This document shows positions 1 to 18,560 of a stretch of 64,000 nucleotides of DNA, one piece after another. A model generated the notes under the pieces. It was not told the origin of the DNA and searched no databases. It saw nothing but the letters and a program-made list of their open reading frames with translations. Positions within the stretch are counted from its first letter, which is position 1. Every line of letters starts with the position of its first letter. This stretch comes from Heteronotia binoei (lineage: Eukaryota), in NCBI RefSeq assembly GCF_032191835.1, contig NC_083223.1:123752001-123816000 (forward strand), given 5' to 3'. Position numbers and translations under genes: made by a program.

Positions 1-1175
1 AGTCAAAGAAAAACAAAACTCGAGGCACATTTATGCTGTTAGAGACTCAAATGGCAGTCTGCATAATGACACAAATAGTATTATATAATGCTTTGAACAA
101 TATTATAAAAAGCTTTATGATTATCAGAATGCAGAGCAATTAGAAAAATTTCTAAATCAAGCTATAACAGAACAAGAGGTAAGAGAGGCCATAAATCAAC
201 TCAAGAACAACAAAGCAGTAGGAAATGATGGATTCCCTGCAGAATTTTTTAAGACTTTTAAGAAGGAGTTATGTAAACCTTTTGTCGAGCTTAGTAATGA
301 TATCTTAAAAACAGGGAAGCTACCGTTTTCATGGACACCAACTAATACAATTCTGATACCAAAACCCAACAAGGACGCAACTACAGTCTCAGCATATCGC
401 CCAATTACATTACTAAAAGTTGATACAAATATCTTTTCAACTATATTAGCAAAAATGTTAAAACAGATTCTGCCACAGTATGTAAAGGAAGCTCAATCAG
501 GTTTTATTCCTCAGTGTAATATAATAAACAATTACGGAGAAAAAAAACACAATTATTGGCAGTATCTTTTGACATTGAAAAAGCTTTCGACAGCGTACAT
601 ACTGATTATATTCATAAGCTTTTGGATATTGTAGGTTTTGGACAACAATTTAAAACTGCTATTAGAGCTTTGTACCTAAATCCATCTACTAAATTAAAAA
701 TTAATGGGTCAACATCCAATTCTATACCGTTACGTCATGGGACAAGACAAGGGTGCCCTTTGTCACTGCTTTTGTTTATTTTAGCAATAGAGCCTCTTGC
801 AGAGTACATAAGAAATAACCAAAAGATTAAGGGGGTACAAATAAATTCAGATATACAAAAGTTTGCTCTATAAGCAGATGATATGATTTTATATCTTACA
901 AATCCATTTGAGTCTCTAAAGGAACTCTAAAAAGGTATCAAATTATTCAGTTTACATTCAGGACTCAAATTTAATGAAGAAAAGACCATTATGCATCCAA
1001 TAAATGTAAGGCAATCAGAATTAACCAAAATACAAACAGAATTTGGTTACAAAATGTCAAAAACTCCTTGGCGATATCTAGGAATATATATACCAAAAAT
1101 TACTAAAGATATATACCATTGCAACTTCATAAAGTTGCAAGACGAAATCAAAAGCTCATTAAAGAAGTGGGAAGG

Positions 1176-1304
1176 NNNNNNNNNNNNNNNNNNNNNNNNN
1201 NNNNNNNNNNNNNNNNNNNNNNNNNNNNNNNNNNNNNNNNNNNNNNNNNNNNNNNNNNNNNNNNNNNNNNNNNNNNNNNNNNNNNNNNNNNNNNNNNNNN
1301 NNNN
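1176..1304. other. Assembly gap (129 N)
   Basis: Run of N. Confidence 1.
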
Positions 1305-1636
1305 TATAAATCGAAATATAAGTGGAACTTAAAAATGCTCACTTGGAATGATAGGTTAAGTTTATTGAAAGCATACATTTTACCTAAGTATCTGTTTTTA
1401 TTTAGAGCTCTCCCTCTGTTAATTCCGTCAAAAACAATACAAGAGTGGCAAAGTCATCTAAACAATTTTTTTTGAACTATAAACGTCCACATATCAACTT
1501 TAAAACTATTAGTAGAACAGTTAATAGAGGTGGTATACCTTTTCCAAATTTAAGGTTATATTATGAATCAGTTCATATATCAATATTATTACGTGCAGCT
1601 ACTGAACAAAATCCACCAGCATTTATAGTCTTATAG

Positions 1637-2050
1637 TTTTGTTAAATTGAATTGCAGAAATTCACAGAACAACCAGAACATTCCACAGAACAATCAGCAC
1701 AGTCAACAACCATCTTCCTTATCTTCACACCCCTTCCAACCCTCCCAGCAATTAACACAGAACAATGGTCACATTCAACAGCCAGTTTCCTTATCACTAC
1801 CCTTCCAGGAAGCCCCACCAAACAATGGGCACATCCACAAACCTATTGCCCTTTCACCACACCCCCTCCAGCCTAGAAATAGCAGCTGTCCAGCAGCCCC
1901 GGCCTCACTCAATGCACAGCAGCCAAGAAGGTCAGAGTGCCTGCTCCGGCTGCAATGCCACTGAGGATGTTCTCCGCAGCCGAGAACGAAACGTCTGGAA
2001 GAAAAACTTTCTCCAGTAGAACTTGTGCCCAAAAGATTCTACAAACCCTA
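1637..2050 (+). mobile_element. 5'-truncated Penelope-like element 3' end inserted in the L1
   Basis: Non-L1 segment with three diverged ~55-70 bp repeats (QNNGHIQQP-like frame) ending in a hammerhead core typical of PLE termini; right boundary approximate (2020-2055). Confidence 0.7.
1958..1998 (+). ncRNA. Minimal type I hammerhead ribozyme motif
   Basis: CCA-CTGAGGA-T-GTTCTC-cgcagcc-GAGAAC-GAAAC-GTC-TGG: core, perfect 6-bp stem II, palindromic ACGT stem III, GUC triplet, CCA/TGG stem I. Confidence 0.8.
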
Positions 2051-3073
2051 ATGAGTTAGAACAGTTATTATATAAGGCTAAGGAACAAAAAGCAGGTTTT
2101 ATAACAGTAATGTACAAATTATTCAATAACTTAGAAGAAGAGACAAAAACTCTGTATCAAAAACAGTGGCATGCTGACCTGCAGAAAACATTAACAGATA
2201 CTGAATGGGATCACATCTGGAATTCACCTAGCTACACGTCAAATATTTTTCCAGTTCGTTTACAATTAATAAAAGTGTTAACTAGGTGGTATATGCCACC
2301 TTCTACTCTAAGCAGAATAGATCCTAAAATTTCATCATTACATTTTAAAAACTGTGGCCATTCCTCAAACTATTTACACAGTTGGTGGGCAAGCCCAAAA
2401 ATGCAAATCTATTGGACTAGCATAGTTAATAAAATAAATGAAATTTTGACAATAAATATACCATTTACTCCAGAAGCAGTTTTGTTAGATCTCTGGAATA
2501 TAACACAGGGTAATACTTCAAAGAAAGAAATTGGTTCAATTTTGTTAAATATAGCTAAAAGGTTAATTGCATCAAAATGGAAAGATGACAAGGTACCTAC
2601 CGTATCAATGTGGATAAATAAAATATGGGAATACTTTGTTTATACAAAATTGGCATTTGTAACATCAAATTGTTTTCCTGAAAAATGTATAAAAAAAGTT
2701 GTTAGACCATTGTTTCCGGTAATAGAATATTTATCTCTAAATGACATTATACCTAATAATTCTTTGTATGCTAATTTGATATACTTTTCAAGTTGGAAAC
2801 CATAAAAGAAATATATACTGAAAAATTTCAAAGGAAACCCTAATTTTTCATTATGTTAATACAGGGTTTGTGTTTTGTTTTGTATTTTATTTCACGATGT
2901 GTTATGTTATGTTAGATAATATAGGAATTTAATAAAAATGTTAATTAAAAAAAGTATACAGAAAAATATGACTTTTTAAAGTTAATCAAAAGAAGTAAAA
3001 CCCAAAATGGTCTAGTGACTGAATATGCTTCAGGAGGCACAGAAAGTTGAGACCAATTGAGAAACAATTAAAG

Positions 3074-3760: not shown

Positions 3761-4621
3761 ACACTGCTACCCAGAAGTGTGTCCCCCATTCAGTATGTGT
3801 GCTTCCCATTTTTGTTACACGGATGTAGAACTCTGCATTTATCCTTGTTGCATATCTTATTCATATCCACCCACTTTTCTCATGTGTTCAGATCTAATTG
3901 AAATCTATATCTTCCAGTTATGGCATGGAAAATAACATCACCTGGTATATATCATTCTATTAAGCTTCCATTAAAGGGGCAAGACATTTTTTTTCCTCCA
4001 GGCATTTGGCAACTCTAACTAAGTATAGTTGTTCCTCTCAGTAATGAAAAGCTGAGGGCAGTTGATTACCTTGGAAGAAAGGGGGAGGAGAATAATCAGA
4101 AGAGGATGGGTAATTGGTCTGCTCAATTTCCTAAGAAATTATTCTTGAAGAGGAAATTTGAGGCAGGGAGACAATATCCTCTCACAATCCCTTTTAGGTT
4201 TTCATGTTATTTGATAGTAAAGTCTCTAATTCTATACAAATCATTACAATAGCAAAACATGGTTACCCACAAACTAGGAGGCATCTGCATAGCTGTGGAA
4301 AAACCCCTCCCAATATGGAAAAGCATGGCCATCATCTCCCAGTGGGGCATTCCAAGTAGACAGATAGATATGGTAGGAATTTCTGTTCACTTTGGACACT
4401 TCCAAGGTATGCAGAAAATATTAGTATTTAAACAAACAAATAATAACAAGAACCTTCCTCCAAAACTGCCTGTTAAGCATTGAGAATACCGATTGCCTTA
4501 TGATCCAAGGAATGTTGAAGGTACTTTAGCATCTGATAAAAATAATGGTGGAAAGGGGACAGGGGAGGGACTTGGTCTGCTTAACCTTGTAATAGTTTGT
4601 GCTATCCAGCTTGGTGTAGTG

Positions 4622-4900
4622 AGAGCCAGTTTGGTGTAGTGGTTAAGTGCGTGGACTCTTATCTGGAAGAACTGGGTTTGATTCCCCACTCCTCCACTTG
4701 CACCTGCTGGAATGGCCTTGGGTTAGCCATAGCTCCGGCAGAGGTTGTTCTTGAAAGGGCAGCTGCTGTGAGAGCCCTCTCAGCCCCACCCACCTCACAG
4801 TGTGTCTGTTGTGGGGGGAGAAGATATAGGAGATTGTAAGCCGCTCTGAGTCTCTGATTCAGGGAGAAGGGCGGGGTATAAATCTGCAATTCTTCTTCTT
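4622..4900 (+). mobile_element. tRNA-derived squamate SINE with L2-like tail (Squam-type)
   Basis: A box ggtgtagtggtt, B box ggtttgattccc, body, gggcggggtataaat and (TCT)n tail; homologues at 6313, 8166, 54521. Confidence 0.88.
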
Positions 4901-6211: not shown

Positions 6212-6708
6212 CAGGGGTCCCCAACCCCCGGTCCGTGGACTAGTCCTGGTCTGTGGCCTGTTAGCAACCGGGCCATGAGTTGTATAATTATTTCATTATA
6301 TATTACAATGTAGTCAGAAGGAGAAGAGGAAGAAGATGATGACAATGTAATTGGATTTATATCCTGCCCTCCACTCTGAATCTGAGAGTCCCAGAGCGGC
6401 TCACAATCTCCTTTACCTTCCTCCTCCACAACAGACACCCTGTGAGGTGAGTGGGGCTGACAGAGCTCTCCTCAGAAGCTGCCCTTTCAAGGACAACTCT
6501 GTGAGAGTTAGGGCAGCTGCAAGTGGAGGAGTGGGAAATCAAACCTGGTTCTCCCAGATAGGAGTCTGCACATTTAACCACCACACCAAACTAATAAGAA
6601 TAAAGTGCATAATTATATTATCCCAAAACCATCACATGCTCCCACCCCAGTGGAAAAATTGTCTTCCACAAAACCTGTCCCTGGTGCCAAAAAGGTTGGG
6701 GACCACTG
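6212..6708 (+). mobile_element. hAT-Charlie MITE, MER1-like, carrying a nested SINE
   Basis: Termini caggggtccccaacc / ggttggggaccactg; 8-bp TSD TACTAGTG / TATTAGTG. Confidence 0.85.
6313..6592 (-). mobile_element. tRNA-derived SINE inserted in the MER1-like MITE
   Basis: Reverse complement of the 4622 family; GAA/GAT tail at the left end. Confidence 0.85.
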
Positions 6709-7827
6709 TATTAGTGGAATTGCAAATGGGTTTTAGATCTAGGGTATTTTCTTAAATGTTTATTATAGATTCAGAAATTATATTGCTATACAAAAGTTTT
6801 AAATATTTTCTCCTCCAGATAGAGGATTCTCAGCAGCCTCCACTTCTATAAATGTCTGCTTTCAATCTAATCTATCACTGTGTTTGGTAGATTTTTTTTC
6901 TTGCCTTATCATTTCTCCCAGTCTTGTCTTATCTATATCATCCTGCTGCAGTCATAAGATTTCATTGCCTGATTATTCACCTTCTCTTGAAAGGCTTTAA
7001 TAAATACATTTAGCAAACAGTTCTTATTGATCTCCAGGGTATCTCCTATTAAATTCTATCCTATTATGCAATTCAAACATGCTTGTACTGTTTTTGCTCC
7101 CCTTCCTGTACACCTGAACTAAAATTTAATCCATGGTAATTAAAAGACATTCACCTCTGTTTATTTTTTACTTACTGACTTTAAAAGTAGTGTGTTATGA
7201 AGGACTTGAATAAACATTTCAGTCTTTAGAAAGCTATGGTGTCTTATGGAGAAAATATGCAATGCAAAAACACAAAACTGGTGTCAAATTAGTATTCCTG
7301 AGATATCTCTTTTCCCCTCTGTTATGTATAAAGCTTACCCTATCTTCTGACATCATCATGAGCATTTCCTCAGTTTCCACTCAGCTTTATTAACTGCCAT
7401 TGGTATATGTAAGAAAAGCACAGCAAGATGACATCAAGACATGAGTTAGATTTTACTGTACATTATTGAGATAACTTGAAATGCAGATGCCATTTTCAGT
7501 GGCATCCTGCTATTTCTCAAAAGGTACAATTCCTCTGTTAGACCAATTTATTTGGTGGCACAAACTTTCACAGGCAGAGCTATTCCATCAAATTCCTACA
7601 AAACTCACGGCTTACTAATTTAATTTTCTTTTGCTGTTGCAGACTCAAGTATTATAACTCTGTTCCTCACTTAGCCTGTTTTAGATACTGCTATCAAAAT
7701 GCTTTCTGGAAGTACAGAAGAACAGTTTTTAGAATAAAACATATTTGAGTTATGATTTATAGTTCATTAGGATATCTCCAGAATGCATGTGTTACTGCCA
7801 TGACTTGTTAGCAGTATATTGAAAGTA

Positions 7828-18194: not shown

Positions 18195-18560
18195 TCTGAA
18201 GCAAGTCCAGGGACACTTTTAAGACCAACAAAGTTTCATTCAAAAAGTGAGCTTTCATGTGCTAAAAGCACACTTCATCAGACAACAGTATGAGTATAGA
18301 ATGGAATTAGCAGTCCTACATATAGGGAGTAGGCAGTGAATTAGTATGCAAAATAGTGAAAATTCTTTTAATAGATTAAAATAATAACAAGTTTGGTTCT
18401 GGTTATTCTTGTTATTCTTTTAATCTGTTAAAAGCGTTATCACTATTTTGCATACTAATTCACTATCGTCTGATGAAATTTACTTTTACTGCACAAAAAC
18501 TCGCATTTTGAAGAAAACTTTGTTGGTCATAAAGGTGCCACTGGACACCAACTTTGTTCA
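18195..18560. mobile_element. Fold-back element with inverted Penelope-type termini and an inner ~57-bp-arm palindrome
   Basis: Outer arms ttttaagaccaacaaagtt / aactttgttggtcataaaggtgcc, each with a CTGATGA core; inner arms 18335-18391 and 18408-18464. Confidence 0.7.

What the first reader, a model, noticed from the sequence alone, without database searches (positions are those of the whole stretch)
1958..1998. Near-intact minimal hammerhead ribozyme in a Penelope fragment inside an L1
Seen: CCA|CTGAGGA|T|GTTCTC-CGCAGCC-GAGAAC|GAAAC|GTC|TGG. All catalytic core nucleotides are present, with a perfect 6-bp stem II, a self-complementary ACGT stem III, a GUC triplet (predicted cut after C1995) and a 3-bp stem I. 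One extra U sits between A9 and G10.1. Known: Penelope-like elements carry minimal type I hammerheads with palindromic stem III that are thought to act as dimers. Inference: this copy could self-cleave any plus-strand transcript crossing it, possibly in trans with another copy.
Basis: partly seen in the sequence, partly recalled or inferred. Interest (0 to 1): 0.8.

Follow-up and report, generated by a model that had tools for sequence, protein, structure and literature searches.

The report
Ordinary Penelope hammerhead copy in L1
The hammerhead ribozyme motif is really there, but it is the standard, already described ribozyme carried at the end of a truncated Penelope-like jumping gene in a lizard genome, and nothing shows that it cuts RNA at this spot.

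Summary
The motif is confirmed letter for letter at 1958-1998 (+) and is not a chance match. It is the canonical minimal hammerhead of Penelope-like elements (PLEs), not a "near-intact" one.

- **The "extra U".** U1968 is the conserved unpaired base of this class. It is also the middle letter of the element's start codon (ATG 1967-1969).
- **Match to a tested ribozyme.** The architecture is that of Poseidon_Ac from Anolis carolinensis: 3-bp stem I, 6-bp stem II, 7-nt loop, ACGU palindrome, cut 26 nt after the ATG. Four of the nine stem pairs differ by compensatory double changes.
- **The insert.** Public RNA and DNA reads bound the repeat at 1650-2054. It is truncated at its 5' side. Its 3' end lies 88 nt after the ATG, where tail-less Poseidon_Ac copies end (about +85). 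Both flanks match LINE-1 ORF2p.
- **Activity.** The family is transcribed, but no reads start or end at 1995/1996, and the flanks have zero depth. There is no partner copy in cis. The relative in Anolis cleaves only with its own protein present.

The functional inference is therefore weak. The scan already holds 59 notes with the words hammerhead and Penelope for this genome. Verdict: a known kind of element, low interest.

The parts
1..1649 (+). Left flank: decayed L1 ORF2, reverse-transcriptase part. An N run at 1176-1304 was left untouched.
   Evidence: Pfam RVT_1, E 5e-10, for 556-870. phmmer against human LINE-1 ORF2p: residues 595-697, E 1e-19, and residues 842-881, weak. Stop codons interrupt the frame.
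1650..2054 (+). Penelope-like element insertion, truncated at its 5' side and without a tail: part of the pseudo-LTR, the hammerhead, and the first 88 nt of the element's ORF. The 3' edge may lie up to 2058.
   Evidence: Reads at least 88% alike from two RNA runs, one RNA-contig run and one DNA-contig run cover only 1650-2057. The flanks have zero depth. Loose ends continue before 1650 and behind 2054. The 3' end at +88 fits the ~+85 boundary of tail-less Poseidon_Ac copies.
1655..1708 (+). 21-nt tandem repeats inside the pseudo-LTR part. Degenerate repeats of about 60-70 nt run on to about 1873.
   Evidence: Tandem Repeats Finder: period 21, 2.7 copies. Self-blastn: 1684-1738 with 1756-1807 (78%), and 1683-1741 with 1815-1873 (73%).
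1958..1998 (+). Minimal type I hammerhead motif of the PLE class.
   Evidence: Sequence. Unique in the window, none in shuffles. Same architecture as the Poseidon_Ac hammerhead, with 9 of 9 pairs kept and 4 compensatory.
1958..1960 (+). Stem I, 5' strand (CCA). It pairs with 1996-1998 (TGG).
   Evidence: Poseidon_Ac has CCT/AGG, so the pair next to the core is changed on both sides.
1961..1967 (+). Catalytic core box C3 U4 G5 A6 G7 G8 A9.
   Evidence: Family reads have the same letters, apart from a minor T>C at 1962.
1967..1969 (+). ATG made of A9, the unpaired U (1968) and G10.1: the start codon of the element's ORF.
   Evidence: [quoted passage not shown] Here 1969 + 26 = 1995.
1969..1987 (+). 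Stem II (1969-1974 paired with 1982-1987, 6 bp) and its 7-nt loop (1975-1981).
   Evidence: Covariation against Poseidon_Ac and against 42 metagenome sequences of the same geometry. Most family reads have T at 1981, in the loop.
1988..1995 (+). G12 A13 A14, the palindrome ACGU (15.1, 15.2, 16.2, 16.1) and C17. The predicted scissile bond is 1995/1996.
   Evidence: The family reads show no variants here. The ACGU self-duplex is worth -1.7 to -3.1 kcal/mol.
1996..2054 (+). Remnant of the element's ORF start after the cut site. This copy lacks 7 letters that other copies have between 2020 and 2021, so the frames before and after that point differ.
   Evidence: tables 4 and 7. The local alignment to Poseidon_Ac places a 7-nt gap at the same place, and the homology is modest (42 of 2000 shuffles reach the score).
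2055..2805 (+). Right flank: the L1 ORF2 C-terminal part resumes.
   Evidence: phmmer against human LINE-1 ORF2p residues 1047-1233, E 2e-11. Zero read depth at 88% likeness.

Best explanation
**What it is.** A Poseidon-type Penelope-like retrotransposon inserted a dead-on-arrival copy into an older, decayed L1. The copy spans 1650-2054 and is truncated at its 5' side.

**How the copy arose (inferred).** By analogy with Poseidon_Ac of Anolis, reverse transcription started inside the template RNA, about 85-90 nt into the ORF of the next tandem unit. It then ran back through the hammerhead into the pseudo-LTR and stopped early. Every such copy therefore carries the pseudo-LTR/ORF junction, with the hammerhead about 60 nt from its 3' end.

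**The hammerhead.** It is the class-typical minimal form.
- The catalytic core is intact.
- Stem II is long and stem I is 3 bp.
- A conserved unpaired U doubles as the middle letter of the ORF's ATG.
- Helix III has no loop. It is a palindrome (ACGU) that can form only between two copies.

**Function in the parent element (inferred from the literature).** It is a weak ribozyme that cuts 26 nt after the ATG and needs a dimer or the element's protein.

**Function at this locus.** It is most likely an inert passenger. I found no partner in cis, most of the element's ORF start is missing, and no transcription was detected.

**Shown here:** the sequence, the boundaries, the homology and covariation, expression of the family, and the lack of read ends at the cut site. 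The rest is inferred.
For: - **Sequence.** Core and stems are as reported. The pattern is unique in the window and absent from 100 shuffles.
- **Class hallmarks.** PMC4209133 lists them: a base between positions 9 and 10.1, the G10.1-C11.1 pair, palindromic 15.2-16.2, a long helix II and a short helix I. All are met.
- **Poseidon_Ac, per PMC11167929.**
[quoted passage not shown] Here the ATG is at 1967-1969 and the cut follows 1995.
  - In the alignment with the published junction, 9 of 9 stem pairs are kept, 4 of them by changes on both sides. Slid controls give 33-44% paired.
- **Read boundaries.**
  - Depth is confined to 1650-2057 and is zero in the L1 flanks.
  - 311 reads in run X8 continue 5' of 1650, which shows the truncation.
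  - 270 reads continue 3' of 2054 into sequence that resembles the Poseidon_Ac ORF by eye.
- **3' end.** The "tail" of Poseidon_Ac spans about nt 85-119, so tail-less copies end near +85. This copy ends at +88.
- **Flanks.** Both match LINE-1 ORF2p in the same order and orientation.
- **Independent sequences.** A scan of metagenome contigs used only the core boxes and the spacing.
  - 53 of 80 hits have exactly this spacing.
  - Stem II pairing is 3.81 of 6 against 2.38 +/- 0.18 in shuffles.
  - There are 59 cells with compensatory changes against 27.9 +/- 6.1, reached by 0 of 500 shuffles.
- **Inactivity at this locus.**
  - No place where reads begin or end in excess (table 6).
  - The ACGU duplex is worth only -1.7 to -3.1 kcal/mol.
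  - The only other hammerhead in the window is on the other strand and has AGCU.
Against: - No Rfam hammerhead model scores it, even at E<=10 on 66 bases.
- No reverse transcriptase or GIY-YIG endonuclease coding sequence lies in or next to this copy.
- I could not trace the family's reads further than about 45 nt into the ORF. The link to a full PLE therefore rests on homology to Poseidon_Ac, which is modest beyond the ribozyme (42 of 2000 shuffles reach the score). A BLASTP of the N-terminal peptides found nothing.
- Pfam found no RT or GIY-YIG in ORFs near the metagenome look-alikes.
- No target-site duplication could be defined.
- About 125 ORF2p residues are unaccounted for between the two L1 flanks.
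- The RNA libraries look unstranded, and only about 6% of each run was read. Weak transcription or a small cleaved fraction (under about a fifth) would be missed.
Confidence: 0.88

Rival explanations
1. The copy belongs to a non-autonomous derivative of a PLE (an animal "non-LTR retrozyme"). Such units carry a pseudo-LTR and a hammerhead, are transcribed, cut at the hammerheads, circularised, and copied back by PLE enzymes.
For: - RNA depth is highest over the stretch next to the hammerhead (1903-2057 in run X2), and reads joining opposite strands exist.
- A 2026 preprint reports that PLE pseudo-LTRs are closely related to vertebrate non-LTR retrozymes.
- No RT or GIY-YIG sequence was tied to this family here.
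Against: - There is no tandem array here. Only one copy lies on this strand in 64 kb.
- Hundreds of reads run on past 2054 into sequence that resembles the Poseidon_Ac ORF by eye.
- The 3' end at +88 fits internal initiation of reverse transcription on a PLE template.
- No excess of read ends at the cut site.
Confidence: 0.07
2. One reading: this copy is a working ribozyme at this locus. It would cleave plus-strand transcripts that cross it, by pairing in trans with abundant RNA of the same family, perhaps helped by the element's protein.
For: - Core and stems are intact and identical to the majority of expressed family RNAs.
- The ACGU palindrome is invariant in the family reads, so any family RNA could pair with it.
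- Family RNA is abundant: 779 and 2326 reads were laid from about 6% of two runs.
Against: - Read depth in both L1 flanks is zero, so no transcript across the locus was seen.
- No pile-up of read ends at 1995/1996, even at family level. The same was reported for Anolis.
- A 4-bp intermolecular helix is very weak.
- Cleavage of minimal PLE hammerheads in vitro is low even as dimers.
- The Anolis ribozyme was inactive without protein.
Confidence: 0.04
3. A chance look-alike of the hammerhead core in repeat-rich DNA.
For: There is no Rfam hit, and the fold is no more stable than shuffles.
Against: - None of 100 shuffles holds the pattern.
- The architecture matches a biochemically tested hammerhead in register, with compensatory changes.
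- It belongs to an expressed multi-copy family that keeps the core.
- Covariation is seen in 44 sequences.
Confidence: 0.01

Closest known systems
Hammerhead of Poseidon_Ac (PAc), the Penelope-like element of Anolis carolinensis (Mob DNA 2024, PMC11167929)
   Same: - The core box CUGAGGA is followed by U and G, which form the ORF's AUG.
- Stem II is 6 bp with a 7-nt loop.
- GAAACGUC carries the ACGU palindrome.
- Stem I is 3 bp.
- The cut falls 26 nt after the AUG.
- Genomic copies end about 85-119 nt into the ORF.
- RNA-seq shows no read ends at the cut site.
   Different: - The letters of stem II, of the loop and of one stem I pair differ, with the pairing kept through compensatory changes.
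- The pseudo-LTR part is longer (over 317 bp here against 126 bp) and holds tandem repeats.
- Homology after the ribozyme is only modest, so this is a different family.
- This copy is a fragment without RT or endonuclease sequence.
Minimal hammerheads of metazoan PLEs (Cervera and De la Pena 2014, PMC4209133). Their cleavage as dimers is reported by Lunse, Weinberg and Breaker (RNA Biol), which I know only as cited in PMC6765202.
   Same: - A base between A9 and G10.1.
- The G10.1-C11.1 pair.
- A long helix II and a short helix I.
- Palindromic 15.2-16.2 without loop 3.
- Mostly found as solo copies from truncated elements.
- Already reported in reptiles.
   Different: Nothing of substance. 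Stem I here is 3 bp, against the 4-5 bp described for the Schistosoma families, and so matches Poseidon_Ac.
Animal non-LTR retrozymes (PMC7229834; bioRxiv 10.64898/2026.07.22.740005)
   Same: Type I hammerhead with a weak helix III, related to PLE pseudo-LTRs, and abundant as RNA.
   Different: Retrozymes are tandem units with canonical helices I and II and give circular RNAs. Here there is a single copy with a piece of ORF attached and no tandem partner.
Rfam Hammerhead_1 (RF00163) and the other Rfam hammerhead families
   Same: The same catalytic core and the same type I topology.
   Different: None of these models matches at any threshold tried. I infer that the missing loop 3 and the 3-bp stem I are the reason.

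Membership tests
Hammerhead ribozyme, minimal PLE class | Conserved core: C3 U4 G5 A6 N7 G8 A9, G12 A13 A14, A15.1-U16.1, H17 | tested here: met
   All are present at 1961-1967 and 1988-1995.
Hammerhead ribozyme, minimal PLE class | Helix II closed by G10.1-C11.1, long (6-8 bp) | tested here: met
   1969-1974 pairs with 1982-1987, 6 perfect pairs. Supported by covariation.
Hammerhead ribozyme, minimal PLE class | One unpaired base between A9 and G10.1 | tested here: met
   U1968. Named as a conserved feature in PMC4209133.
Hammerhead ribozyme, minimal PLE class | Palindromic 15.2-16.2 with no loop 3, so helix III forms only between two copies | tested here: met
   ACGT at 1991-1994. The duplex energy is -1.7 to -3.1 kcal/mol.
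Hammerhead ribozyme, minimal PLE class | Short helix I flanking the core and the cut site | tested here: met
   CCA with TGG, 3 bp. Poseidon_Ac has CCT with AGG.
Hammerhead ribozyme, minimal PLE class | Self-cleavage after H17 | not testable with these tools
   The only indirect data are that no excess of read starts or ends lies at 1995/1996 in two RNA runs.
Hammerhead ribozyme (Rfam families) | Match to a curated covariance model | tested here: not met
   No hammerhead hit at the gathering score or at E<=10.
Penelope-like element, Poseidon type | Hammerhead at the pseudo-LTR/ORF junction, with the ORF's ATG at A9-U-G10.1 and the cut 26 nt after it | tested here: met
   ATG at 1967-1969 and cut after 1995. 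Compared with PMC11167929 and its consensus file.
Penelope-like element, Poseidon type | ORF with a telomerase-like reverse transcriptase and a GIY-YIG endonuclease | tested here: not met
   This copy holds only 88 nt of the ORF start. For the family as a whole this was not tested, because reads extend only 30-45 nt past 2054.
Penelope-like element, Poseidon type | Homology of the sequence after the ribozyme to a PLE ORF start | tested here: inconclusive
   Local DNA score 24 against shuffles of 15.4 +/- 3.1, with 42 of 2000 reaching it. BLASTP of the short peptides found nothing.
Penelope-like element, Poseidon type | 5' truncation, and a 3' end at the internal start site of reverse transcription (about +85 or +119 in Poseidon_Ac) | tested here: met
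   Reads run on before 1650 and behind 2054. The end lies at +88, against about +85. The start sites of this family itself are not known.
Animal non-LTR retrozyme | Head-to-tail tandem units, each with a hammerhead | tested here: not met
   One copy on this strand in 64 kb. The tandem repeats at 1655-1873 hold no hammerhead.

The most novel reading that the evidence does not exclude
Solo, truncated PLE copies with intact hammerheads, scattered through host transcription units, might be cut in trans. Abundant family RNA would supply the second half of helix III and the element's protein would assist. Bursts of PLE expression would then cleave many host transcripts at once.
Probability: 0.04. 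Interest if true: 0.6.

Novelty: already known. Interest (0 to 1): 0.12.

Why it matters
It matters little by itself. Minimal hammerheads in Penelope-like elements have been known since 2014. The anole version, with the start codon inside the ribozyme, the cut at +26 and genomic copies ending near +85 to +119, was dissected biochemically in 2024.

This copy is a clean textbook example that reproduces those published features in another family:
- stems kept by compensatory changes;
- a 3' end at +88;
- no read ends at the cut site.

It also corrects the reading of the "extra U". For the scan, it helps to know that such motifs are hallmark passengers of truncated PLE copies. This genome already has 59 notes holding the words hammerhead and Penelope.

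Tried and rejected
- **Rfam, three ways.** No hammerhead family matched. The two hits were a CRISPR-DR61 match at 2101-2136 (16.4 bits, E 8.7) and a truncated IRES_KSHV match (14.9 bits against a gathering score of 100). I take both as chance.
- **BLASTP.** The first 60 residues of the Poseidon_Ac protein against the translation of 2023-2202 gave no alignment. The peptides are too short and the frame here is shifted.
- **Folding.**
  - The monomer fold is no more stable than shuffles.
  - The two-strand minimum-energy fold is just an extended duplex of the two stem II hairpins (-32 kcal/mol).
  - The active dimer crosses stem I, so these tools cannot score it. Only the ACGU duplex could be scored.
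- **Metagenome look-alikes.** They were useful for covariation. Pfam found no RT or GIY-YIG in stop-free stretches of 140 aa or more, either within 3.5 kb upstream or within 4.2 kb downstream. They say nothing on the link to PLE proteins, and I did not determine which organisms they come from.
- **Target-site duplication.** None could be defined. There is only an AATTG repeated at the 5' junction (1645-1649 and 1650-1654), which may be microhomology.
- **Continuity of the L1.** By human ORF2p numbering the flanks end near residue 907 and resume near residue 1035. I could not tell a deletion at insertion from a lineage difference.
- **The 105-aa open frame at 1647-1964.** It ends in the UGA of the ribozyme core. 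It has no Pfam match, and all three plus-strand frames are open in this T-poor stretch, so I read it as a composition effect.
- **Earlier notes.** Look-ups by place and by the words "Poseidon hammerhead start codon" gave nothing.

Full report
**Observation.** The letters at 1958-1998 on the plus strand are exactly as reported: CCA, CTGAGGA, T, GTTCTC, CGCAGCC, GAGAAC, GAA, ACGT, C, then TGG.
- All invariant hammerhead positions are present.
- Stem II is a perfect 6 bp closed by G10.1-C11.1, and stem I is 3 bp.
- Helix III is reduced to the palindrome ACGU without a loop.
- The pattern CTGANGA..GAAACGTC occurs once in the window and in none of 100 dinucleotide-preserving shuffles.
- No Rfam hammerhead model detects it, at the gathering score or at E<=10 on 601 or 66 bases.
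- The monomer fold is no more stable than shuffles.

**The "extra U" is canonical.** Cervera and De la Pena (PMC4209133) defined the minimal hammerheads of Penelope-like elements (PLEs). They list these as emergent, conserved features:
- a base between positions 9 and 10.1;
- the G10.1-C11.1 pair;
- palindromic 15.2-16.2;
- a long helix II and a short helix I.

Every one of these is met here, so the motif is a standard member of the class and not a near-miss.

- Here A9, U1968 and G10.1 spell ATG at 1967-1969, and 1969 + 26 = 1995.
- The published PAc consensus ends in ...CCTCTGAGG and starts with ATGCCTGCC.... The junction therefore has the same layout: a 3-bp stem I, a 6-bp stem II, a 7-nt loop and GAAACGTC.
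- In the alignment all 9 stem pairs are kept in both sequences. Four are kept through changes on both sides and one through a change on one side. Sliding the partners by 1-3 columns drops pairing to 33-44%.
- After the ribozyme the DNA homology is modest: local score 24 against 15.4 +/- 3.1 in shuffles, with 42 of 2000 reaching it.

**What public reads show.** I laid two raw RNA runs, one RNA-contig run and one DNA-contig run on 1500-2400, counting reads at least 88% alike.
- Depth is confined to 1650-2057. It is zero at 1500-1623 in all four runs, and from 2058 on in three of them. There the RNA-contig run X2 has a single contig of depth about 3 over 2058-2237, about 94% alike, which I take to come from another L1 copy.
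- The repeat family is therefore multi-copy and transcribed, while transcripts across this particular locus were not seen.
- Reads continue with a consistent sequence before 1650 (61 and 311 reads), so this copy is truncated at its 5' side.
- Reads also continue behind 2054 (67 and 270 reads). The sequence there resembles the next stretch of the PAc ORF by eye.
- Other copies have 7 letters between 2020 and 2021 that this copy lacks. The aligner placed a 7-nt gap at the same place against PAc.
- Family reads carry the same core, stems and ACGU as this copy. The majority differ at 1981 (in the loop), and at 1938 and 1956, where this copy has TG against CG.
- No place in the stretch shows an excess of molecule starts or ends, 1995/1996 included. 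PMC11167929 reports the same for Anolis RNA-seq.
- Caveats: about 6% of each run was read, and the two strands have equal depth, so the libraries look unstranded.

**The 3' end.** The supplementary legend of PMC11167929 places the roughly 34-nt "tail" at about nt 85-119 of the PAc ORF, between the two internal start sites of reverse transcription. Tail-less genomic copies thus end near +85. This copy ends at +88, or +92 at most. It therefore has the anatomy expected of a tail-less, 5'-truncated PLE insertion. Because the sequence is continuous across the cut site, its template RNA was not cleaved at this hammerhead. [quoted passage not shown]

**The host element.** The two flanks match LINE-1 ORF2p in the same order and orientation.
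- 556-870 carries Pfam RVT_1 and matches residues 595-697 of human ORF2p (E 1e-19).
- 1445-1570 matches residues 842-881, weakly.
- 2092-2655 matches residues 1047-1233 (E 2e-11).
- About 125 residues, in human numbering, are unaccounted for between them. I could not tell whether L1 sequence was lost at insertion.

**Independent support for the structure.** I scanned metagenome contigs for the core boxes and the spacing alone.
- The scan returned the maximum of 80 loci, and 53 of them have exactly this spacing.
- In the 42 distinct sequences, stem II pairing is 3.81 of 6 against 2.38 +/- 0.18 after shuffling.
- With the window and PAc added, there are 59 cells with compensatory changes against 27.9 +/- 6.1 (0 of 500 shuffles reach it), more than in any slid control.
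- Pfam found no RT or GIY-YIG near these loci, so they do not bear on the link to PLE proteins.

**Function.** These points come from the literature:
- Minimal PLE hammerheads show no cleavage as monomers and low cleavage as dimers.
- The PAc hammerhead cleaves only when PAc protein is added. C3G and G8C abolish the cleavage and the double mutant partly restores it.
- Hammerhead mutants do not affect insertion in vitro.
- The minimal RNA template for insertion needs the first 172 nt of the ORF, where the authors place the protein-binding motif.

These points hold at this locus:
- A monomer cannot form helix III.
- The ACGU self-duplex is worth -1.7 to -3.1 kcal/mol.
- The only other minimal hammerhead in the window lies on the other strand and has AGCU.
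- Only 88 nt of the ORF are kept.
- No transcription across the locus was seen.

I conclude that the motif is an intact but most likely inert passenger.

**Novelty.** The kind is known, down to the details of its architecture. The scan already holds 59 notes with the words hammerhead and Penelope for this genome, which those notes call a lizard. I did not test that identification. I built no consensus and repaired no frame.

Noticed in passing
window 18205-18546 (hammerhead at about 18249-18289, minus strand): A second minimal PLE-type hammerhead of another family: CTGATGA, A, a 7-bp stem II with a TTT loop, GAA, AGCT, C. It sits in one arm of a fold-back insertion. The arms are 18205-18289 and 18462-18546 (78% complementary), with an inner pair 18335-18391 and 18408-18464 (91%). 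The copy in the other arm is degenerate. Its AGCU palindrome cannot pair with the ACGU of the 1958-1998 motif.
   Followed up: partly
window 1650-2057, RNA runs X7 and X8: Among the differences between RNA reads and this copy, T>C is the commonest kind (16 places in X8, against 6 for A>G). Several are minor variants clustered at 1962, 1970, 1971, 1996, 2008, 2009 and 2017, in reads that carry other differences too. This could reflect subfamily variants, decay of this copy, or A-to-I editing of antisense transcripts. There is no strand information and no matched DNA to decide.
   Followed up: no
window 1705-1917, RNA run X8 (table 5): A few reads join opposite strands within the pseudo-LTR part, for example 1705 with 1763 and 1766 with 1917. 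This fits inverted or fold-back copies of the family elsewhere in the genome.
   Followed up: no
window 1647-1969: A 105-aa open frame through the pseudo-LTR part ends in the UGA of the ribozyme core (1962-1964), two bases before the ATG at 1967. It has no Pfam match. All three plus-strand frames are open in this T-poor stretch, so it is probably a composition effect.
   Followed up: partly
window 4597-4889 and 6351-6755: Two copies of a short repeat lie in opposite orientations. Their translated ORFs share a motif, ...AAYNLLYLLPPQQTHCEVGGAERAL... and ...AAHNLLYLPPPQQTPCEVSGADRAL... This is probably a SINE.
   Followed up: no
loci L009, L014, L016, L023, L028, L041, L068 and others (metagenome contigs): Many metagenome sequences with the same hammerhead geometry share a stem II loop of the form GATAGGT, close to the CATAGAT of Poseidon_Ac. 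This hints that the loop, which codes residues 3-5 of the ORF, is conserved across distant hosts. I did not determine where the contigs come from.
   Followed up: no
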